Assembly: GCA_965637545.1 (NCBI GenBank)
Contig: OZ281499.1
Coordinates: 14,384,001 to 14,448,000 of the forward strand
Reading direction: 5' to 3'
Source: Phallusia mammillata
Lineage: Eukaryota
DNA length: 64,000 nt
The position numbers and the translations under genes are program-made. Positions 5,478-50,422 of this stretch are shown one piece after another (position 1 is the first letter of the stretch; each line of letters begins with the position of its first letter). The notes below the pieces were generated by a model that made no database searches, was not told the DNA's origin, and was given only the letters and a program-made list of their open reading frames with translations.

Positions 5478-5501
5478 ATGTCAGGACGTGGTAAAGGTGG
5501 C
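5478..5501 (+). pseudogene. H2A: 5' fragment of the H2A gene interrupted by the retrotransposon
   Basis: ATG TCA GGA CGT GGT AAA GGT GGC behind an intact H2A promoter, then diverges. Confidence 0.93.
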
Positions 5502-5704
5502 AAAGGATTGGGAAATTAGTCTGATTTCTGCCGGAAAGCTTTAACACAGGGTCGGAAGAGACCCTGTTTTGGATTTACTTATTGGATTTATTCACTGCTC
5601 TCATTGGATTTTGGATTATCCTTAAAGATCTGTGACGCACCACAAACTAAAAGTGGGCGTGGTTACCCCGCCCTTTAAGGTCGTGGGTCATCATTGTTTA
5701 CAAC

Positions 5705-7084
5705 ATGGAGGATGCCCCTGCAGGCTCCTCCATCGGTCTCCATGAGCAACAGGCCACGGGCGGCTCTGCTCCTGAGGCATCGACGCAATGTTCTTCTGCT
5801 GTCAGTACAAGACAGGGAACGCTCCCTAGGGGAGGACCCCCCGCTGCAAAGCGTGGATGGAATAGAGTTGTCAGCGGAGGCACTACAGGGCCCACTGCAT
5901 CCTTTTCACGGGAAACGGAGGTGATGGTTAAATTTCCCGCCAAGAAAACACGGGGGCTCATTTACAAATGGTTAGAGAAGATTAAGTTTCCTCTCCAATC
6001 AATAGAAGGCATTGTCGAAAGGTTTAATGGCCTTACCGACATTACCTGTACATCGAAGGAGAAAGCGAGAGCACTCGCTGAAAGATTGAATACCTTAAAG
6101 GAAGTTGAATATGCCAAACTTCATGATCCGGAATTTACAGACGTCATAATAGAGCATATACCGAATAGGCTTGAATGGGAGCCGATCCTATACCAACTAG
6201 AGCGACGACACGGAGAAGTACGGAAATATTATAAATTGCGGGATCCGCAATACAGAAAATTTAATGGCAAAAGAATCTTCGAGGTGAGAACGAGCGACCT
6301 GAAGGAAAACCCGATACCGAAGAATGTAAGAGTAAGCGGTCTCAAATTCGTAGTGCACTATGACAATCAACCCATCCAGTGTTTTCTTTGTCGAAAGTTT
6401 GGTCACAGAGACCGTGATTGTCCTCAAGAGGATATTGACGTAGAAGATTTTCCTTCTCTGAATATCACCCCTAAAGAAAGCAAACGCAATCACAGTCGCC
6501 ATGCCACTGTAATCAACGCGGTGGCTAACGCAAAGGCCGTCAAAGAGGCATATGAAGAATTGAAGAGAACGGCTGCAATTGCAGATCCGCAAAGCAGTAC
6601 AACGAAAGATTCACTCGATACCAGCGAAGGGGACCCCGTTCCCCCCTCACAGGATGCAACGGATACACCACCTAATGAGGCCCAGGAGGAGGAGGTCCAC
6701 TGCGACTCCTCAACATTAATCACCGATTCCAGCGGCGAAGCAGGGGACGGAGAGGAGACTTCGGAGGAGGAGAAGGAGGAGACCTCGGAGGGAAACGGCT
6801 TTACAAAGGTCAGCAGAAAGAGGCGAGGGAGGTCTACTCCCTCCCCTAACAATAACATTAAGAAAAAGTTGCAAAAAATATCCAAGTGCCCGTGTGGGCG
6901 CTTTGTGGGAGAACCAGGTCCGGGCTTGCAGAAGGTCTGCGAGGGCTGTTCCGCAATCACTTTTGGTTGTGCTTGCGGTTCAGTTCTCGCAGTCCAACCC
7001 GGACATACAACAACTTGCCCAAAGTGCGAGAGGACTTACCATCCTCATACGCACCACGCTAGTGACCCGGGTGGTCAAACGTAA
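5705..7084 (+). CDS. Retrotransposon ORF1 (gag-like nucleic-acid-binding protein)
   Basis: 459 aa; CX2CX4HX4C knuckle CFLCRKFGHRDRDC (6380-6421), acidic linker, basic patch RKRRGR, C-terminal 8-Cys domain. Confidence 0.9.
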   Translation: MEDAPAGSSIGLHEQQATGGSAPEASTQCSSAVSTRQGTLPRGGPPAAKRGWNRVVSGGTTGPTASFSRETEVMVKFPAKKTRGLIYKWLEKIKFPLQSIEGIVERFNGLTDITCTSKEKARALAERLNTLKEVEYAKLHDPEFTDVIIEHIPNRLEWEPILYQLERRHGEVRKYYKLRDPQYRKFNGKRIFEVRTSDLKENPIPKNVRVSGLKFVVHYDNQPIQCFLCRKFGHRDRDCPQEDIDVEDFPSLNITPKESKRNHSRHATVINAVANAKAVKEAYEELKRTAAIADPQSSTTKDSLDTSEGDPVPPSQDATDTPPNEAQEEEVHCDSSTLITDSSGEAGDGEETSEEEKEETSEGNGFTKVSRKRRGRSTPSPNNNIKKKLQKISKCPCGRFVGEPGPGLQKVCEGCSAITFGCACGSVLAVQPGHTTTCPKCERTYHPHTHHASDPGGQT

Positions 7085-7132
7085 TCTATATTATCTTTGC
7101 ATCCTTTTATTTACACTGCCTAATTTTTTTTA

Positions 7133-10100
7133 ATGGCTGACTACCTTAAAATAACAACCCTCAACTGCCGAGGACTCGCGGATGACGCCAGGAGACTGGC
7201 CGTCTTCGAGAGTCTTCGGCAGTTGGAAGTCCATGTCGTCCTCCTGCAAGAGACTCACTCGAGAATCGAACAGGAGGAGACATGGACTCGTCAATTTGGG
7301 CCTTCCAGAGCCTTGTTCTATTCAAATCAAAATAACAAAAGTGTGGCGAGCAATGGAGTCGCAATTTTACTAATTCACCCGTCTCTCTCTTTTGTGTCGC
7401 ATCACGGGGATCGGGACGGGAGGGTTGTGGTTGCCGATATTAAAATATTTACTCAATACGTACACGTCATAAACGTGTACGCCCCGGAAAAAGATATTAA
7501 AGCTGCAATTAGAAAATCATTTTTTGAAAATTTGTATCCATTCGTAACCTCCAATCACCCAATTATACTCGCAGGCGATTTTAATGGGGTTGAACAACCC
7601 GGTTTAGACCGTTTTCCCCCCTCTAAACGCAACAATACGGCAATGGTTCCTTTGAGGCAACTCTGCCATGACTTTCAGCTTTCCGACACTTTTCGTTCCT
7701 TGCACGGAAACAAGCACATTTTTACGCGGCGACAAGGAAATTCGCAATCTCGTTTAGATCGCTTTTATGTAAATAATTCGATACAACCAATTCACGAAAA
7801 AACCCAAAATTTTTCTCTTTCGGACCACGACGCGGTGATCCTCACTGTCCAAATTGGGCCTCTGCCCCAGCGAGGATCACCGCCATGGAAAAATAATGTC
7901 GCCGCGTACGATGAGCACTTCCAGGAGGAGCTCTCGAACAGATGGCCTCGGTGGCTAACACTGGAGGAACATTTGTTCGAGAACGCTCCTTCCTGGTGGA
8001 TGCTCATCAAACAAAAAATTAAATCATTAAATATACAAAATTCGAAACGTCTAGCTAAATTACAAAAACAAGAACAAAAGGACCTGGAACGAAAAGTGTT
8101 GGAATTGTGGGAAGGCATGGCAGAGAATCCTTCCCTACTTCCCCAATATTATACCCTTAAAAAACAATTGGCCACCCTTCTTCGCAATAGGGCGAAGAAG
8201 AAAATTACTAGGGACCGACTTTTAAGTTTTGAACAAGGAGATAGGGGAACCAAAGAATTTTTTCAACGCTTTGCCCAGAATCGCCAAAGGACTTTGATCG
8301 AAAGCCTGGTTGACGATTCTGGGCAAGCAAACTCCGACATCCCATTTATTTTGGAAAAAACCGCAAAATTTTACGAAAACCTTTTTTCGGCCAGTAATGT
8401 AAATGAGCCCATCCAAGAACAATTCTTAAATAATATACATCCCAAATTTAGCGAGAACGCATGTTTGGCATTAACCGAAATAATTAGTAAAGAAGAAATT
8501 GAACGCGCTCTCGCCACGTTTAAAGCTGGGAAATCTCCCGGACCCGATGGTCTCTCCTTTGAATTTTATAAACTCAATTGGGGAACCATCGGGACAAAAT
8601 TTACTGAAATTATTAATTGCATCCATAACGGTCAAATTCCCTCAAATTTTAACGATGGGCTCATTACACTTATCCACAAAAAAAACGACAAGGACCAATT
8701 AGGTAACTACAGACCTATCTCCTTGCTCAATTCTGACCTAAAAATATATTCTAAAATCCTTTCCCTTCGCCTCAAGGCCATTTTACCGGATGTTGTTCAA
8801 CCCCATCAATTTGCAACACCCGGCAAAAAAATATCGGAAGCCACAACCCTCTTACGGGACCTTTTGCATGAGGCCCAAAGGAGAGAGCTTAATTACTACT
8901 TTATTTCGCTAGACTTTAAAAAAGCATTCGACTCCATTGCCCACACTTGGCTCTGGAAGGTCCTGTCTAAACTGGGCTTTCCTCAACAATACATTAACAA
9001 TATTAAAAACTTGTACAGGGAGGGCAGCTCGAAGATTCTCGTCAATGGCTTTTCCACCAGAAGCGTTCCCATTCGAAACGGTGTTCGTCAGGGCGACCCC
9101 CTTAGCCTGTACTTGTTCGTACTGGCTATTGAACCCCTCGCCCAAGCGTTCCAGGATGACCCCAGTGTTGAGGGAATCCGCCTACCTGGAAGGCATTTGA
9201 TTAAGTGCCCCAGCTATGCGGATGACGTCACACTGACCCTCACCCATTCTTATTCGGTAAATAAAGCTTTCCACATTCTTGACCTTTTTTATTTGGCGTC
9301 GGGCTTAAAAATTAATCCTGAAAAAACAAAAGGCATTAAGCCAAGCAACCTAAACACCTCTACCCAACTTCCCGATATCAATTGGTCTGAATCAAAATTG
9401 GATATTTTAGGAATTTCGATCGGCCCTCAAAAAACAATTCAAAACTTGTGGGAAGCAAATACCCAAAAATTAAAACAAGAAATCTCGCTCTTAAAGCGCT
9501 ACCCCTGCACCTGGAACGCCAAGTCACTCTTATCAAAAGCCAAATTATTACCACACCTATCCTATACTGCTAACCTTTATCCCCTCCCTGGCGACATCGC
9601 AGAGAAAGTGAACGCCATGGTGGAAAAGTACGTGTGCGGGAGTCGGAGAGTTGCCCTCCCGATTGAAACACTAAGCAAACCATTTGACAGAGGTGGGTAC
9701 AATGTGGCAAACATCCCTCTATACTGTGACCTGCTTTATCTTTCTAACATTTATCAATATTGTAAACATAGAGAAAACAATTTAACAACCACACCCGGTC
9801 TTGCCTTGACGGAATACAACATCGGGCATCAGCTTTCCCGTCAATTTGGCTTTCGTTTAATAAACAGCACTCCCCATGCTGATGTCCCATCACCCTTCTA
9901 CACCCATTCTCTAAAATTAATTGATAAATACAAATTAAAACTAGAAACCCTCCTCAATGGCAAGATTCGTAACCTTTATCGTTCCCTCAATTGCTCCCCT
10001 AGTGGCACCCTCCACCCGTCCCAGAGTGACCACTGGAGGAGCATTCACCACCCTATACTCTCCAATAACTTACGAACTTTAAATTACCGAATAACATGGA

Positions 10101-10546
10101 ATTGCCTTCCCCTTTCTACAAAATTTTCCCATTTCCTTCTCGACAACGACACATTGTGCCCCTTCTGTCAAAACTTCGCCGAAACAACATGGCATATTTT
10201 TGCTGAATGTTCTCAAATTCAACCGGTTTGGCGCGAGGTGCACCAACTCATCACTCGTGCCACTGGGTGCACCTCGTTAAACATTTCAATTGCTTTGATC
10301 ATCAATATGGAAATACCACCGCCCCTGGAGTACTGGTCCGACCTTTTAATTTACTTGATTTCTGTTACGAAACATAGTATTTGGATACATCGCAACAAAA
10401 TAAAATATGATAAAATACAACCCTCAACCAACAAAATTTTTTTGTCTGTTAAACAATCCATCATTCACCGACTTTTCTTTGAGAACAAACGCCGTGATAC
10501 CACTTTTTTACCAGTACTCCAGGGGCTGAGGGAAGCCCTAAGGTAG
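7133..10546 (+). CDS. Retrotransposon ORF2: APE endonuclease, reverse transcriptase, C-terminal CCHC motif
   Basis: 1137 aa. Endonuclease motifs TLNCRGL, LQETH, GDFN, SRLDRFY, SDH. RT motifs KSPGPDG, NYRPISLLN, LDFKKAFD, GVRQGDPLS, YADD. C-terminal CPFC-x8-H-x4-C. Confidence 0.97.
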   Translation: MADYLKITTLNCRGLADDARRLAVFESLRQLEVHVVLLQETHSRIEQEETWTRQFGPSRALFYSNQNNKSVASNGVAILLIHPSLSFVSHHGDRDGRVVVADIKIFTQYVHVINVYAPEKDIKAAIRKSFFENLYPFVTSNHPIILAGDFNGVEQPGLDRFPPSKRNNTAMVPLRQLCHDFQLSDTFRSLHGNKHIFTRRQGNSQSRLDRFYVNNSIQPIHEKTQNFSLSDHDAVILTVQIGPLPQRGSPPWKNNVAAYDEHFQEELSNRWPRWLTLEEHLFENAPSWWMLIKQKIKSLNIQNSKRLAKLQKQEQKDLERKVLELWEGMAENPSLLPQYYTLKKQLATLLRNRAKKKITRDRLLSFEQGDRGTKEFFQRFAQNRQRTLIESLVDDSGQANSDIPFILEKTAKFYENLFSASNVNEPIQEQFLNNIHPKFSENACLALTEIISKEEIERALATFKAGKSPGPDGLSFEFYKLNWGTIGTKFTEIINCIHNGQIPSNFNDGLITLIHKKNDKDQLGNYRPISLLNSDLKIYSKILSLRLKAILPDVVQPHQFATPGKKISEATTLLRDLLHEAQRRELNYYFISLDFKKAFDSIAHTWLWKVLSKLGFPQQYINNIKNLYREGSSKILVNGFSTRSVPIRNGVRQGDPLSLYLFVLAIEPLAQAFQDDPSVEGIRLPGRHLIKCPSYADDVTLTLTHSYSVNKAFHILDLFYLASGLKINPEKTKGIKPSNLNTSTQLPDINWSESKLDILGISIGPQKTIQNLWEANTQKLKQEISLLKRYPCTWNAKSLLSKAKLLPHLSYTANLYPLPGDIAEKVNAMVEKYVCGSRRVALPIETLSKPFDRGGYNVANIPLYCDLLYLSNIYQYCKHRENNLTTTPGLALTEYNIGHQLSRQFGFRLINSTPHADVPSPFYTHSLKLIDKYKLKLETLLNGKIRNLYRSLNCSPSGTLHPSQSDHWRSIHHPILSNNLRTLNYRITWNCLPLSTKFSHFLLDNDTLCPFCQNFAETTWHIFAECSQIQPVWREVHQLITRATGCTSLNISIALIINMEIPPPLEYWSDLLIYLISVTKHSIWIHRNKIKYDKIQPSTNKIFLSVKQSIIHRLFFENKRRDTTFLPVLQGLREALR

Positions 10547-10670
10547 TCAGCCAATTACTTGTGTTGTCATTATTTAATTTGTTTTGTTTTTCCGCTTACG
10601 TTTTTTCTTTTTCCGATTATTACTATTTCCCACTTACCCATGTCTACAATTTATATCCACTTTTACGACC

Positions 10671-10701
<31 letters not shown>

Positions 10702-11531
10702 GCAAATGCGCACAGATATATACCAAACTTTGTACTAAATGAAGGTATATAATACGCATTCAAATATATATGAATGTAACTGTCAACGGTCATTAGACAA
10801 CATTGCCCATGTTGCTTATTATGTTTATGTTTCTATCGTTTTTCTCAGTCCTTCACTTCACACCCGGTTTTCTGTTGTTTGTCCGAAAAAAAAAAATAAA
10901 AAAAATACCTACATACATTTGTGTGCATGTGTATTTATTGTGTATGTGATATGTATATATGTCCTGTTTTTGTCGTCGATGTGTTTCGTCCTTTTCTCGA
11001 GAAATATGCATAAAATGCGCATGTAGCACACATCCGCTATACATATACTTGTTGCCATAGTCACGTTACCCCCCGCTCATCGTGCTTCATCGGTCTCATC
11101 CGATATATAAATATATTTATACAGCGACCATTCTATTGGCACTTAAACTAATGACATCCTGTTCACTATCTAATATTTGTATATAATATCATTGTTAACT
11201 ACGCTCATCTCTTTATTTCTGTATTTGCGCTATTTAATAATATTAATAAATAATAATAACATAATTAGGCTCTATATTTCTTTCCTTTTTCTCTGCCATA
11301 ATTATTTGTTTTGTAAACTATTATCATTTATTGCGTACATGCTATTGCAGTGTTTCTATTATTATAATATTTTGTATGTATTTAACTCCGTTGTGTTACA
11401 TCAATTTGTCTTCGTAATATAAAAATTTGTTGTGATATACCAAATGGTGTGTTTGTAATCCAATGTGCTTTCGCAATGTATTATGTTGTTTTTCGCATGT
11501 ACGATTTTTCGGTTGTGTAATTTCTTTTTGA

Positions 11532-11912
<381 letters not shown>

Positions 11913-43745: not shown

Positions 43746-46700
43746 GCACCAAAGCAAGCGCCGCGGGGGGCTTCATCACCCGAGCGAGGTCATTGCCGCC
43801 CTTGCCCCAAAAAACGGCTCTTTTCAGAGCCACCCGATCGTTCAAAGAGAGAATTGCAACGGCCGAAAGGCGGCCTGGTTAAAGTCATTTGCCGATTTCT
43901 TGCCGTTGTAGTTTTTCCTCGTTTTGGTCCCAGCCAATTCACCACGAAACACCGAAAAATGTATTTGCCCACACTAAAGCGCCACTAGCCTACTGACTGG
44001 CCCGCGGGAAAGCGCCCTTTGCGTGTTTTTTTTTCTCTGCCGACGTTTAGGCCAATGATTCGTCTGCTTTTCCGCGCCCGCCAAAAATAACAAATAAATA
44101 CACCAATAAATGCTCCACAGCAGCCAGAGAAATACCAAAATCACAAGCAAAACTAGAGCGCTGCCAGCTTGTGCTACTCGAAAAACTCGAAAAGTTCCAC
44201 CCGCCGATCTACGATCCTTCCACCACCGGACCGCAACTGAAAAACAACCCGACGGGAAAGGCCCCGGACCGCGAAGGATTTTGCAACAAATTCATTAATA
44301 CTTACATAATTAACTGGCGCTAATGCTAATCAATTTGTAAAAGTCACACAATTTTTTGCTCGCCGCAAAGCCGAGATGCAGGCTCTCAAACATTCACTCA
44401 TAACGTAAACTGTTTCTAGTCTTGTGTGTTGGTAATCCCCTGTGGTGTGAAAACATAATAAATGGAACCCACTGATCTGTGAAGGAACCCAATATCGTCA
44501 TAATTCTTCGCGCCATAGAGATAAAATGCTTTGTATTTATTTTTTTCCTAGTGTTGTATTTTGTTGTAACAATTATTGCGAGTCCCGTGAAAATCTTCAA
44601 AATTTTTCAATAGTTTCGACATATAAGCACTTTTTTTTGTTAATTTATTCTAATACACATGTACACTTCTTTGTCTCTCCCCTGTTAATTTTCAATTTGG
44701 TAGTGTACCTAACTGTGGTGTGTCACTGGCAGTTTATTTCGACTTTATTGCAACAGTGATTGGCAAGGCGGCCCACGTAAACTTTTTGCTGTTGTTAAAA
44801 GCAGGGTCAATGACGTCTCAGAGACGCAAAATTTTGCATGACGTTATCATATGACCTTAACTATGTTGTGACTTAATTTTATGTTTTTGTGACGTCATTA
44901 ACTGATGTACGTAGGATTGTGCTCTGGTCTGGACCCCTCTCATCATTATCTGTCAAGTTTCTCCTGAAAAAGCTGTTTGTTGTAAGAAGGCAAGTGTTGC
45001 ATTCTTTCCCTTGTGTTTATGGTTTTAGATTCAATTTTGTGTAATTTGTTTACAGTAGCCAGTAGAAATTTTAAACACTTTGTCTATATTTGCTTTATAG
45101 TTTTCAGCAAAAAATGTTTAAGCTGTAGATTGTATCCCAATCTGTTTTCATTTATTGTTACCAATGTATACATTTCAGCCTCAGCATCTAGCCTCAGCAC
45201 CAGCAAAATAGCCTCATTTTACTAAAATATCATGTGGTTCGGTCAACTGATTTGGATTTGAAAAATACTACTAAAGAGAAGGTTTTAAGGCATTATTGTA
45301 ATGCAAACAATTATGGTAAATTGCATGATCTATTTGCTTTTAGGATTATAGAAAACAAAATTATACTGGGTTACTTTTTTATGTATTTCACAATTTTTCC
45401 CTGTCATATGATCCAACAAACATATTGATGATTTGATGCATTTTTGAAACTAAAACAACAACAACCTGAAATTAAGATGTATATCCTCAGCTACAAATGT
45501 TGAACACTGTTGAACAAATAAGGGTTGTTTAACCCAGGGGGTGATTTTGTCCACCTAGGAAAGTAATTGTGACAATGTTTAAAGTTGAAGAGCAATTTTA
45601 CTTTTCAAAGTCGATTCTAAATTTTCTGCATACAAAATATAAGATTTGGGGAATATGCAATACAACTGTATAACTTGTTGTGTTTATTAGTTTTCCGAAC
45701 AAACACCAAGCAGAACAGGGGCACGCAGCTATTTAAATGATTTGTGTTTGCTGGTAATTGTTTGTGTTTTTATTTTTTTGTAATCTTAATTCAGGTTTAG
45801 GCATTTAATTTGCCACAGGAGACACTGAAATAAGGCTATATAGATACAATGGTAACAAGCATTTTTGAATTTTTTTCACGTTCACACCCTCTACACCAGT
45901 GCTTTTTTAAACTACAAAGTATTTGTATCATTTAGTTTAGTAATAAACAGTATTATCAATTGTGACTTTATGTAAAATGAATAGGAGTCTTTTCTGTCAA
46001 GTAAAGGCAGCTTTGTTCCCAGTCTGTCAATAATAATCATAATATTGTCGTATTTATGGTGTCACAATTCATAGGCCTTCCTATCTGAGTTAATTATTTT
46101 AGAACTAGAAGTAATTAACCCAGCATGTTGTTGTAGCATTTCATTTTTATGTGTTAAACTGGATTTTGACTGCATTGCTGAATGTAAGCAATTGCCCGCA
46201 TCTGCTTGAAAGGCAAGCTTCTAAACGAAGTAAATCTTAAAGGCGGCGATTTTCACTGAGAGCCTCGAAAGAGAGTGATTTTCAAAAAAGGTTGAAGACC
46301 ACTTTACTAAATAAAAAAAAAGCCAACACATATTTTTGTAGTTGACCATTCTTATTCTTGTTGGAAAGTTGAATCAATCTATTGATTCTGCGTGTGTGTT
46401 TTTATTTACAGAAGTATATACAAACATTTTTAATGTGGATTTTCTTCGAAGCAATGTTTCTAAAATTTACAAAATTTCTTTACAAAAATCAAATTTTTAA
46501 TTCGCAATTGTTTTAAAGTGAGACAAAATACTGTGATCAAATATTTTTAGTCCTACACTAGTTTTTGTCCGCATTTTTCTTTAGCTTTTGTTCCTTGTGA
46601 CTTCCTTGTTATTTTATTTATTCTTTTAGGCAAATGAGCAAGTAGAAGATTTTGGTTGCCTGTGTACTGACCCAGTGGGTAGACAATTGAACACACTCCG

Positions 46701-47883
46701 TTTATCTGACTCTAATAATTAAACTATCGCTACCTAAACAAACAACAAGACGCAAAGCTAAATTAACGTTCCCACATTATATTTTAATAAGGCATACCAC
46801 GAAATCTTGCGGCTAAACACGCAACACAAAAGTCACCGCGCCAAGAATCAACTGTGAGATATCAATTCCAATGCGTACTCTAGTCACTCTGGTCACTCTT
46901 ATGATAACTCTAGATGACTCTAGATAACTGATTTTAAGTCTAAAATACGTCTATATTTATAGCGTTCAGGTCATATCTCGTTATCACCGGCATAGTCGTA
47001 AAACGTACGCCCGAGAAGATTAACTGTGTTCTAAACCGTAATTATACTTTAAATCGCTTATAGAATTGTCAAGTGTAACATGGCTGGAAGCAGTTTAAGA
47101 CATTGCTTCACGTTAACACGTAAGGGGACGATAAAACGATAGCCTTAAGCAGTAATTGACCGATGCATTAATAAGTAAAACAGGTTTCAACAGTTTTAAC
47201 AGCCGGTCAAGCTTTTGTGTAGAAAAAGGCGAGTTATGAACGGGGTTGACCGTGATGATATGACACGACAATTACACGAATTAAAATGTTTTGAATTAAA
47301 AAGTCCAAAGTCCGATACACCTGAAAAAGAACTCTTTTTAAACAATTATAGATACATGGGCGACATTTTATGTTTGTTAAATACAAAAAAAAACAGGCAT
47401 TACAAATACCATTGATGAGTCAAAAACTGGCTTGCTGTGTATGTTACAATCATTTTGTAACTTGCCCTGTATATGTGTACTGCTGACGGGTGTAATATGT
47501 ATTGAAGTCATCAGTCAGGAGTTTAATCTAAACACTGTTACTATCATTCAGCAGCTTGTAAATTATAAATTGCTGATTGTGACCGAGCTGCCTTTTTTAT
47601 GCATTGTCCTGGTAAGTTTGGCTTTACCCTCTTGTGTTTCTAAACCTGTAAATGTTTGCCTCTTGTGCAGTATTTGTTCGGCGTTTTATAGACGCATTTA
47701 ATGTCAAACCCCTGTGGCCAAACAGTTGGGTATCTGGTGTCCCGGTTTTTCGCTAGCGTCATTGTGTGACGCTCGGGTGAATGAAAGCGTTACACTTGGT
47801 TACATTTCTTGTTGCTGTTGTCTATTTTCACATACTCTGTTGTGTTGTTCATATTCTGCCGATGACATTTTGTCAATAAACAA

Positions 47884-47958
47884 ATTGAAAGGGAGGCACA
47901 CGAAGGTGCTGCGTGGCAATATTCAAGGCGTCACAAACCCATAGCGATCAGGCGTCTT
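47884..47958 (+). pseudogene. Decayed histone H4 fragment (about codons 10-37) fused to a retrotransposon-like 3' end
   Basis: gaaagggaggcacacgaaggtgctgcgtggcaatattcaaggcgtcacaaacccatagcgatcaggcgtctt aligns to H4 [21 protein letters not shown] with indels. Confidence 0.85.
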
Positions 47959-48150
47959 AAGCCTTCCCATATTTATTCATTTTCTTACGACAGTTTGGCT
48001 CGTTCCTGAAGTATAATTCATTTCTTACGTATGCTAATGCATAAATCGTCTTCAACATACGATTGCAGTAACATATATTGACATATCACAGCTGTAACCT
48101 TTTACAGCACACTTACATCCATCGTTAGTATTGAGGAGAGATGCTTCAGA

Positions 48151-50422
48151 CAGTGGCGGCTCGTGCCTAAAATTTGTGGGGGTGCTGCTCAAAATTTTAG
48201 CCTTTATTGAACATATATAAGTTGGCAATATATAGAAAACCTACATTTATAGTTTTCTAGCCATTGTTTTGTGTAGAAAAACAAGTAATACAAATCTTAA
48301 TTAGCAACTCCATTGTGACGTAATTTTTGTTACGCAATAATGTACACGAGTGTAAATAGCAGACGGCATCATTTGTGTATTTTGTTTACTTGCACAGCGA
48401 CAGCTAAACTGTTTAGCCTAAACACAATAACATGCAGTAATAATGTGGAACAAAAACACACGTGACACAGAAGCGGTTGTAAATACGGTAAAACACAACA
48501 AGAATATAGAAAAAAAAGTAATGATTCGAAAAAGGTCGAAGTATTTCAGTTCGACAACATTTAAAAAATGGTCATATTTCATTTAAGTTACCTTATGATC
48601 ACAGTCAGCGTTTTCAACATATTATATGACCTTCACAGATTATAATTGTCACACAAAAAACTAGCCATACAGCTGTTTATTGGTATCATAACTGACAAAT
48701 TTAACAACCACTTTACATTTGTGTCAGAACTTGTTTATTTTAACATCTTTTTTTGAATTTTTGTGTACAGACTATTATTTGTCTTTCAGATTTTTAACTG
48801 CTATAATTGCTGCTTTATTTGCTGGCAAATAGCTTATAATTGCTTTTTTAAGTGCAAAACTCCTTGAAGCTTTAAAATTTACAACACTCTCACTTAAATT
48901 TAAACCATATTATTAAACCTTGTGCTTCCTTTTTACAACCAAAATGAATCATAAAGTTATAGTTTGGGCATGATAATTGATAGCTTCTTCCTTGATTCCA
49001 AATGACAACTGAGAAACTGTTTTTCTATTTAGTAGTACTAGCACTGCAGGTGCAAGTCTTTTGGAAATAATGGTGTTCCTAACAAAGGTTTGCATCCAAA
49101 CTGTTTTGCCTTTGAAAGACTCATGGAAACAGCAAAAAGGATTTTTCATCCTAGTAATTTCACTTGTCAAAACATCATCTAGATTATTTTCAAAGTAATC
49201 ATGAACTTCAGATCTACAGAAACATTTTCATTTCAGTAACTAGTATTTCTTTGTCAACAATAGGATGTGCTTGGTGGTCACTACTAGCTTGTCTGTAGAA
49301 TGTTCATTCTTAAGACACACTTCCTGTGAAGCAATTTAGCAGCTACTGTTTAGACAAACAGTACATGTCCATTATATCAATACTCATCTTTTTCATCATG
49401 TTCACGTAAGGGAGTTTCAAAGTTTCCACAGAACAAAATGCAGTCTATTATTTTGGACAAAATTTCACGATTTTTTACCACTTTTTTGTTGTGTTCAATA
49501 ATTGAAAGTCTATATACGCCTCACTAAGTTTTTCCTTAATATTTACAGTTCCCAAAAGTGAAAGTGAAACATCATTGCCCACATGCTTCTTTGACTTCTC
49601 ATGTTTTTCTGCTTTCTCACCTATTTTGGCTACATTTGTAAAACCATCTTTTGTCCAGCATTTTTTATCACCTCCAAACAGCAAAAATGGAAAACAGAAC
49701 AGTGCATTTTTAACTTCACAACCACGAAGCCATTTTTTCTTTTGATACCATTCAGAATTAAAACTGCGTATATATTTCTTGTTGTGGCTCATTCCTGGCT
49801 GACAAAGTTGAATATCAGGCGTTGGACGCCCTTTTTTCTTTATACTTACCTTTTCAGCACTTGATAACTGCGAAATCTTAAGTTGCTGAAGCTCACTTAC
49901 AGTCACCGAATTAGAATCTTGAAAAGCCATGATTAACCTTTCAATCAAAAACTGTAAAAATGATTAAAAAAGAATAACTGTCGTACTGTAGGCTACTCAT
50001 TGTCGAACCTGATGGTACACGTGATTTGCTTTGGCACACAATAAACGCGGAACAGACAACTACTTCCGGGTGCCCAGGTCACACGCTACGTGATTGGTGG
50101 AGCTGCGCGAGCCGCAGCACCCTGGCTCCTATTTCGCCCAGCATGTAGCTTTTCAAAGTGCGCATGCGCAGAACCGCAAAACGTCATGAAACGTCAGAAA
50201 ACTGGAGCTGCAGTTCCAGCATAGATATACATTAGTGTCCAAATTTTTTTTTTTTTCAATGAAAAAAAAGGTGATTAGGGCGGAAATTATGCTTATTATT
50301 TATTGATAAGGAATAAAAAATAAAAATAATGAAAGTTATTTGTAATATTATGGTAGGTTTATTAAGTAAAAATATCTAGGGGGTGCTGCAGCTCCGCAGC
50401 ACCCTAGCACGAGCCGCCCCTG
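48151..50422 (-). mobile_element. Defective hAT DNA transposon (Tip100/ZMYM1-like)
   Basis: TIRs CAGTGGCGGCTCGTGC / GCACGAGCCGCCCCTG; 8-bp TSD GCTTCAGA (48143-48150, 50423-50430). Confidence 0.9.
49380..49931 (-). pseudogene. Frameshifted N-terminus of a hAT transposase (TTF-type zinc finger region)
   Basis: RSFNSEWY..KWL..C...NALFCFPFLLFGG..W...GF, continuing after a frameshift as NREILSKIIDCILFCG...LREHDE. Confidence 0.75.

What the first reader, a model, noticed from the sequence alone, without database searches (positions are those of the whole stretch)
47863..47958. Older independent insertion relic: matching retrotransposon 3' end fused to a decayed H4
Seen: TGACATTTTGTCAATAAACAAA directly precedes an H4 fragment starting at about L10-K12. 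The intact element ends TGACCTATGTCAATAAACAAAAAT, so 14 nt are identical (TGTCAATAAACAAA) and the TGAC/GTCA hairpin is shared. The upstream ~450 bp is T/TG-rich like a 3' UTR but not visibly alignable. The relic junction (ATTG-AAAGGGAGG) lies close to where the H4-derived 5' tag of the intact element ends (GGGAAA). Inference: a diverged family member inserted in H4, implying long-term histone targeting, possibly at a second site about 12-16 nt downstream.
Basis: partly seen in the sequence, partly recalled or inferred. Interest (0 to 1): 0.8.

Follow-up and report, generated by a model that had tools for sequence, protein, structure and literature searches.

The report
Fossil LINE–histone H4 junction beside array
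A short, worn scrap of DNA just outside a histone gene array joins the last 22 letters of a jumping gene that lives in histone gene starts to about 74 letters of a dead histone H4 gene.

Summary
The core observation holds. Window 47863-47884 matches the 3' terminus of the L1/Tx1-like LINE family that sits in H4/H2A gene starts: 14 nt are identical and a small GAC/GTC stem is shared. It abuts a decayed H4 fragment (47885-47958, H4 nt 31-114, 10 mismatches and 3 indels).

Genome-wide, this terminus-plus-H4 arrangement occurs at 3 places: two canonical H4 insertions and this relic. The reversed control pattern gives 0, so chance is excluded.

- The "3' UTR-like" 450 bp upstream is a 5'-truncated solo LTR of a BEL/Pao retrotransposon ending at 47794, itself abutted by a younger repeat.
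- Only 68 T-rich nt (47795-47862) could still be element-derived, and they do not align significantly to any family member I hold.
- No ORF1 or ORF2 remains exist nearby.

Long-term histone targeting is supported, but better by other copies. Diverged family members carry the same 15-nt H4 site in tandem element-to-element junctions, and the H4 flanks show an age ladder of 0%, 2.7% and about 14% divergence.

A "second site" is unproven. All other family 3' junctions I read that lie in histone sequence sit at one position (before GGTGGC). The relic's 12-nt offset fits later deletions equally well.

The scan had already noted this family on other DNA of the genome. This relic is a minor, corroborating fossil.

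The parts
47863..47884 (+). Last 22 nt of a LINE of the histone-start-targeting family: TGAC-loop-GTCA stem plus AATAAA-containing terminus. 47871-47884 is identical to the intact element's end.
   Evidence: The family 3'-end profile gives its best hit in the 20-kb tail at 47868-47884, though E is only 0.8. The stem folds at -3.2 kcal/mol, against -3.1 for the intact copy.
47885..47958 (+). Decayed histone H4 fragment, CDS nt 31-114. It lacks GG (nt 34-35), lacks 10 nt between two GAGGC repeats, carries a 2-nt insertion, and runs into a stop.
47795..47862 (+). 68 T-rich nt between the LTR end and the terminus. Possibly the remains of a diverged 3' UTR; unassigned.
   Evidence: Unique in the genome. 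T 50% and T+G 68%, like the end of the intact 3' UTR. Smith-Waterman against shuffles gives p 0.11-0.9, and the profile without its terminal 20 nt gives no hit.
47419..47794 (+). 5'-truncated solo LTR related (about 73%) to a 628-nt LTR of a 6.5-kb BEL/Pao retrotransposon. It ends ...GAAAGCGTTACA at 47794.
   Evidence: no pol and no second LTR nearby; Peptidase_A17, DUF1759, DUF5641, integrase.
46663..47319 (+). Younger interspersed repeat (84-97% to at least 39 copies, often in pairs about 3.5 kb apart). It abuts the side of the old LTR where that LTR's first ~120 nt cannot be aligned.
47959..48150 (.). Unique AT-rich DNA (GC 36%) after a sharp end of H4 homology. It is not decayed H4.
48151..50422 (+). 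Young ~2.27-kb interspersed repeat, at least 40 copies at 93-98%.
5502..11552 (+). Reference intact element in H2A. It has a 14-nt H4-derived 5' tag (5502-5515), ORF1 5705-7084, ORF2 7133-10546 and a 3' UTR to 11552. GGTGGC is duplicated at 5496-5501 and 11553-11558.
43901..44486 (+). Last stretch of the 6.2-kb histone repeat, 100% identical to the inner units. The array ends at 44486, 3.4 kb before the relic.

Best explanation
This is a fossil 3' junction between a member of the genome's histone-start-targeting L1/Tx1-like LINE family and a histone H4 gene.

How the family inserts (sequence facts shown, mechanism inferred): the element's endonuclease is inferred to nick the bottom strand just before GGTGGC (H4 nt 19; the same word occurs in H2A). 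The RNA is inferred to be reverse-transcribed from that nick. The 5' end joins 15-20 nt further on, duplicating nt 19-33 or 19-38. The element then lies in sense behind the histone promoter.

What happened to this copy (inferred): the hit H4 copy lay at or beyond the edge of the array, or was copied there. It then decayed neutrally, to about 0.15 substitutions per site plus small deletions. Nearly all of the element and the rest of H4 were lost to deletions and to later insertions (a BEL/Pao LTR, then younger repeats). That left 22 assignable nt of the terminus (at most 90) and 74 nt of H4.

Not resolved: whether the junction was at the canonical site and later lost about 15 nt, or was 12 nt downstream from the start. 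Also unresolved is whether the scrap is in situ.
For: - Terminus and H4 are adjacent and in sense.
- Only 3 such arrangements exist in 240 Mb, against 0 in the control. The background density of the 14-mer, about 26 per genome, makes a chance hit within a few nt of an H4 break roughly 1e-6 per H4 fragment.
- The H4 part starts inside the family's duplicated target stretch, nt 19-38.
- Family copies in H4: L033 with a 294/294 identical H4 flank, and L034 with 286/294.
- Tandem element, 15-nt H4 site, element junctions occur in diverged members L038 and L043.
- The terminal motif is kept even in L040, whose ORF2 is 49-63% identical in its aligned pieces.
- The relic's indels are mostly losses (14 gap positions: 12 nt lost, 2 nt gained), one lying between direct GAGGC repeats.
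- Nesting of LTR and repeats around it.
Against: - Only 22 nt tie it to the family, and the family profile alone scores E 0.8 there.
- The 68 nt upstream do not align, although family members as far apart as 71-74% align over the whole 1-kb UTR.
- No ORF1/ORF2 trace and no other remains of a histone unit lie within 20 kb.
- Both sides of the scrap are sharp breakpoints into AT-rich unrelated DNA. An in-situ origin therefore needs at least two deletions.
- The junction is not at the family's otherwise invariant position.
Confidence: 0.8

Rival explanations
1. True second target site. A distinct, now unsampled lineage nicked H4 12 nt further downstream (GGA|TTG), so the relic's junction is original and not a deletion product.
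For: - Turning the canonical junction into the relic's needs at least 2-3 events, against 1-2 from a junction at TTG (my reading).
- The loop of the terminal stem differs from all sampled copies.
- The 68 nt upstream align to none of them, as expected for a separate lineage.
- Older subfamily 5' junctions lie exactly after GGATTG.
Against: - No other place in the assembly has the terminus joined there.
- The five different junctions I read in H4 or H2A sequence (L032, L033, L034, L038, L043) lie before GGTGGC.
- The relic shows three other indels within 74 nt.
Confidence: 0.3
2. Not in situ. The scrap is a dispersed copy of an existing element-H4 junction. It could be a severely 5'-truncated retrocopy of a transcript reading through from the element into H4 (3' transduction), or a patch captured during break repair. 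It then landed in ordinary AT-rich DNA next to the array.
For: - It is an island of about 96-164 nt with sharp borders in unrelated AT-rich sequence.
- No other histone-unit or element remains lie within 20 kb.
- The array ends cleanly at 44486 at 100% identity.
Against: - A read-through RNA should end at the histone 3' end, not at H4 nt 114.
- I saw no A-tail and no flanking target duplication in the sequence.
- The fragment has the same strand as H4 in the adjacent repeat units, and lies within about 650 bp of where the next unit's H4 would fall once the two inserted repeats are discounted. This is weak evidence.
Confidence: 0.3
3. Chance. An AT-rich 14-mer happens to lie next to an unrelated H4 pseudogene fragment.
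For: About 26 unrelated exact copies of the 14-mer exist in the genome. With one mismatch the motif is no commoner than its reversed control (908 against 859). The family profile gives E 0.8 here.
Against: The combined pattern gives 3 hits against 0 in the control, and the other two are bona fide insertions. The break in H4 falls inside the 20-nt target window. Orientation and the extra TGAC stem also agree.
Confidence: 0.03

Closest known systems
Target-specific APE-type non-LTR retrotransposons of the L1/Tx1 group (Tx1 clade elements in multicopy RNA genes and repeats; PMC4640811 names the Tx1 clade as one of three groups holding most target-specific families)
   Same: - APE endonuclease, RT and zf-RVT in ORF2.
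- L1-like ORF2 (PDB 8uw3, E 2.5e-68).
- One fixed insertion position in a tandemly repeated gene, in sense orientation.
- Tandem element-to-element junctions separated by the short target word.
   Different: The target is the coding start of protein-coding histone genes (H4, H2A). I found no paper describing such a target. Clade placement by phylogeny was not done here. The relic itself keeps only 22 nt.
R1/R2 insertions in rDNA arrays and their decayed copies
   Same: A site-specific LINE in a concerted-evolving tandem array, with old broken junction fossils outside the homogenised part of the array.
   Different: R2 uses a restriction-like endonuclease and an rRNA gene target. Here the element is APE-type and the target is a histone gene. 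The analogy rests on my own knowledge and was not tested.
Histone orphons (solitary histone pseudogene fragments outside the array)
   Same: An isolated decayed H4 piece 3.4 kb outside the array.
   Different: It is fused at its 5' break to a LINE terminus, at the LINE family's target window.

Membership tests
Histone-start-targeting L1/Tx1-like LINE family of this genome (reference copy at window 5502-11552) | 3' terminal motif: GAC-loop-GTCAATAAACAAAAAT | tested here: met
   The 14 nt are identical and the TGAC stem is present. The final AAT is absent or altered.
Histone-start-targeting L1/Tx1-like LINE family of this genome (reference copy at window 5502-11552) | 3' junction immediately before GGTGGC (H4 nt 19) | tested here: not met
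   The relic joins at TTG (nt 31), 12 nt downstream. The other five different junctions read in H4 or H2A sequence are before GGTGGC. A secondary deletion cannot be excluded.
Histone-start-targeting L1/Tx1-like LINE family of this genome (reference copy at window 5502-11552) | Sense orientation relative to the histone gene, with the histone sequence continuing downstream | tested here: met
Histone-start-targeting L1/Tx1-like LINE family of this genome (reference copy at window 5502-11552) | 3' UTR homology beyond the terminal motif | tested here: not met
   nhmmer with the terminal 20 nt removed gives no hit at the relic. Smith-Waterman against shuffles gives p 0.11-0.9. The upstream 375 nt are a BEL/Pao LTR.
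Histone-start-targeting L1/Tx1-like LINE family of this genome (reference copy at window 5502-11552) | ORF1/ORF2 coding remains | tested here: not met
   tblastn of both ORFs against 43901-64000 gives only noise (E at least 0.49).
Tx1 clade (as opposed to L1 proper) for the reference element | Phylogenetic placement of the RT and APE domains within the Tx1 clade | not tested
   Only Pfam domains and similarity to human L1 ORF2p were obtained.
BEL/Pao LTR retrotransposon (for 47419-47794) | Homology to an LTR that flanks a Pao-type gag-pol as identical direct repeats with TG...CA ends and a 5-bp duplication | tested here: met
   - L044 has 628-nt identical LTRs 6487 nt apart, a TGCTG duplication and a 1908-aa ORF with Peptidase_A17, DUF1759, DUF5641 and integrase.
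- The window matches the LTR profile at E 2e-56 and up to the LTR's last base.
- The window copy is solo and 5'-truncated.

The most novel reading that the evidence does not exclude
The relic is the only surviving trace of an extinct lineage of histone-targeting LINEs that cut H4 at a different position (GGA|TTG). That would show that target position shifted within a LINE radiation specialised on protein-coding histone genes, and that insertion-bearing units are expelled to the array margin and decay there, as proposed for rDNA units carrying R1/R2.
Probability: 0.2. Interest if true: 0.55.

Novelty: new variant of a known kind. Interest (0 to 1): 0.4.

Why it matters
Site-specific LINEs are known from rRNA, snRNA, tRNA, spliced-leader and repeat targets. 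A family fixed on the coding start of histone genes is a target class I could not find in the searchable literature.

This relic adds time depth. A junction with the H4 flank about 14% diverged shows that the association is much older than the intact copies (0-2.7%). It also shows what becomes of hit gene copies: they are stranded at the array margin, cut down and overrun by other transposons.

On its own it is a small, corroborating fossil. The mechanistic weight lies with the intact and tandem copies.

Tried and rejected
There is no homology. Genome search showed 47435-47729 to be a repeat with paired copies 6.5 kb apart, which proved to be BEL/Pao LTRs.
- A profile of six family 3' ends against the 20-kb tail. 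Only the terminal 17 nt hit (E 0.8), and nothing hit once the terminus was removed.
- Smith-Waterman of the 68 nt against seven family members with dinucleotide shuffles. Not significant.
- tblastn of ORF1, ORF2, all five histones and the Pao polyprotein against the tail. Only the H4 piece was found.
- blastn of whole histone units against the tail. Only the array end and the H4 piece were found.
- Looking for target duplications around the scrap and around the old LTR (CTTGG after the LTR). Reading, I saw none, and the LTR's 5' end is lost.
- The idea that the H4 piece is a 5' tag of a downstream element. Rejected, because tags end at nt 33-38 while the piece covers nt 31-114, and no element follows.
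- Genome search with 47790-47892. It found only itself.
- Literature searches for histone-targeted LINEs. Nothing relevant was found.
I did not try to get round it.

Full report
**Setting.** The window is G000:C6:14384001-14448000 of a 240-Mb eukaryotic genome. Earlier notes of the scan call the animal a sea squirt; I did not test that. Bases 1-44486 are a tandem histone array, first with 5-kb units and then with 6.2-kb units. The rest is AT-rich non-histone DNA. An intact LINE lies at 5502-11552 inside an H2A gene. ORF2 has Exo_endo_phos, RVT_1 and zf-RVT domains and matches human L1 ORF2p at E 2.5e-68.

**The observation.**
- 47863-47884 reads TGACATTTTGTCAATAAACAAA.
- The intact element ends TGACCTATGTCAATAAACAAAAAT at 11552. 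Fourteen nt are identical, and both ends fold into a 5-bp stem (-3.2 and -3.1 kcal/mol).
- A GAC...GTC stem is present in 5 of the 7 sequences folded. The two without it are L034, whose H4 flank is decaying, and the diverged tandem copy L038.
- Directly after the terminus comes H4. Nt 51-114 of the CDS align to 47893-47958 (blastn E 1.5e-11 and 82%; tblastn E 6e-5).
- A global alignment extends the H4 part to nt 31-114: 62 matches, 10 mismatches and three indels. One indel is a 10-nt loss between two GAGGC repeats.

**Chance.**
- The exact 14-mer occurs 34 times in the genome. Eight copies belong to the family and about 26 do not.
- With one mismatch the motif is no commoner than its reversed control, 908 against 859.
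- The terminus followed within 16-46 nt by the H4 word AAGGTGCTGCG occurs three times: two canonical H4 insertions and this relic. The control gives none. Chance is excluded.

**What the family does.**
- Copy L033 (98% 3' UTR identity) reads ...CAAAAAT|GGTGGCAAAGGATTGGGAAAGGG..., with the H4 flank 294/294 identical to a live H4 of the window.
- L034 (94%) has the same junction, with 8/294 mismatches in H4.
- The window copy in H2A has ...CAAAAAT|GGTGGC too. Its 5' end carries 14 nt that are H4 and not H2A.
- In H4 the inferred target duplication is therefore nt 19-38.
- Diverged members L038 and L043 (72-79% and 88% over the pieces aligned) show element end, a 15-nt H4 word (GGTGGCAAAGGATTG), then the 5' end of the next element. 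These are repeated hits on the same site.
- L040, whose ORF2 is 49-63% identical in its aligned pieces, still ends GGACTTTACGTCAATAAACAAAAAT and aligns over the last ~60 nt.
- A pattern search found four family junctions at this position in H4 sequence. It also found three places where an A-run abuts the same GGTGGC word.
- Long-term, position-specific histone targeting is thus well supported, independently of the relic.

**What lies upstream of the relic.**
47435-47729 matches at least 39 other places at about 73%, many in pairs 6487 nt apart.
- One such pair (L044) is a 628-nt identical LTR pair with TG...CA ends and a 5-bp duplication. It flanks a 1908-aa ORF with Pao peptidase, DUF1759, DUF5641 and integrase domains.
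- A profile of 12 LTRs hits the window at 47419-47729 (E 2e-56). It also hits 47734-47794 (E 2e-4), which runs to the LTR's last base.
- There is no pol and no second LTR nearby, so this is a 5'-truncated solo LTR.
- It is abutted by a younger repeat at 46663-47319.
- Downstream, H4 homology stops sharply at 47958. Then come 192 unique nt (GC 36%) and a young 2.27-kb repeat at 48151-50422.

**How much of the element is left.**
- Between the LTR end and TGAC lie 68 nt (47795-47862).
- They are unique in the genome and T-rich like the end of the intact 3' UTR (T 50%; T+G in the top 1% of local windows).
- They do not align significantly to any member: p is 0.11-0.9 against dinucleotide shuffles, and there is no profile hit.
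- Family members as far apart as 71-74% align over the full 1-kb UTR. So these 68 nt either come from a more distant lineage or are not element-derived.
- No ORF1 or ORF2 trace exists in 43901-64000.

**The junction.**
- The relic's H4 part starts at nt 31. That is 12 nt downstream of the canonical 3' junction and inside the duplicated target stretch.
- Deriving it from the canonical junction needs at least two or three events. Deriving it from a junction at TTG needs one or two.
- Against a second site, no other place has the terminus joined there. The five different junctions read in H4 or H2A sequence are canonical. The relic also has three further indels within 74 nt.
- I leave this open, at about 0.3 for a true second site.

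**In situ or dispersed.**
- The scrap is an island with sharp borders in AT-rich DNA, 3.4 kb beyond a clean array end. An in-situ origin therefore needs deletions on both sides.
- A retrocopy of a read-through transcript should reach the histone 3' end and show a tail or a duplication, and neither is seen.
- The strand and the approximate position fit the H4 of a further repeat unit, but only weakly.
- I put in situ at about 0.55 and dispersed at about 0.3.

**Age.** H4 flank divergence runs 0% (L033), 2.7% (L034) and 13.9% (relic), which is a Jukes-Cantor distance of about 0.15. The relic also has three indels. It is therefore by far the oldest H4-borne junction that I could read. One caveat is that gene conversion inside the array may keep the young flanks identical.

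[quoted passage not shown] Five full-text searches found no histone-targeted LINE.

**Earlier notes of this scan.** They describe the same family and sister families on neighbouring DNA. I re-derived the H2A/H4 junctions and the 5' tag myself, and I did not examine the sister families.

Noticed in passing
G000:C6:14350424 (minus strand, about 33.5 kb before the window), C57:10256, C261:7351: Three places where a run of eight A abuts GGTGGCAAAGGATTG, the same H4 position used by the family. This looks like a different, poly(A)-tailed element, or a retrocopy, at the identical site.
   Followed up: no
L038 (C6:14256803) and L043 (C6:14044647): Tandem junctions of element 3' end, a 15-nt H4 word, then the next element's 5' end, in diverged members. 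Their 5' junction lies after GGATTG, 5 nt short of the young subfamily's GGGAAA.
   Followed up: partly
L035 (C3:1082386), L036 (C6:22813662), L040 (C6: about 13833020): Diverged family members whose 3' flanks are not recognisably histone, though L036's TGAGGAAAG weakly recalls GGTGGCAAAGG. They may be off-target copies or lineages with other targets.
   Followed up: partly
window 48151-50422: A young ~2.27-kb interspersed repeat with at least 40 copies at 93-98% identity. It holds a 157-aa ORF on the minus strand (49475-49948). Its type was not determined.
   Followed up: partly
window 46663-47319: A ~657-nt repeat with 84-97% copies, often in direct pairs about 3.5 kb apart. This suggests LTRs of a short, perhaps non-autonomous, LTR element.
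   Followed up: no
L034 2816-3352 (C6: about 14203100-14203650): About 540 nt after the stop of the H4 gene that carries an insertion, there is an ORF1-like stretch only 25% identical to this family's ORF1. This is probably another LINE family at the next histone gene.
   Followed up: no
G000:C38:14998-21050: An unplaced contig carries a 100% identical copy of the window's element and its H2A flank. It is likely an assembly duplicate or a very recent unit duplication.
   Followed up: no
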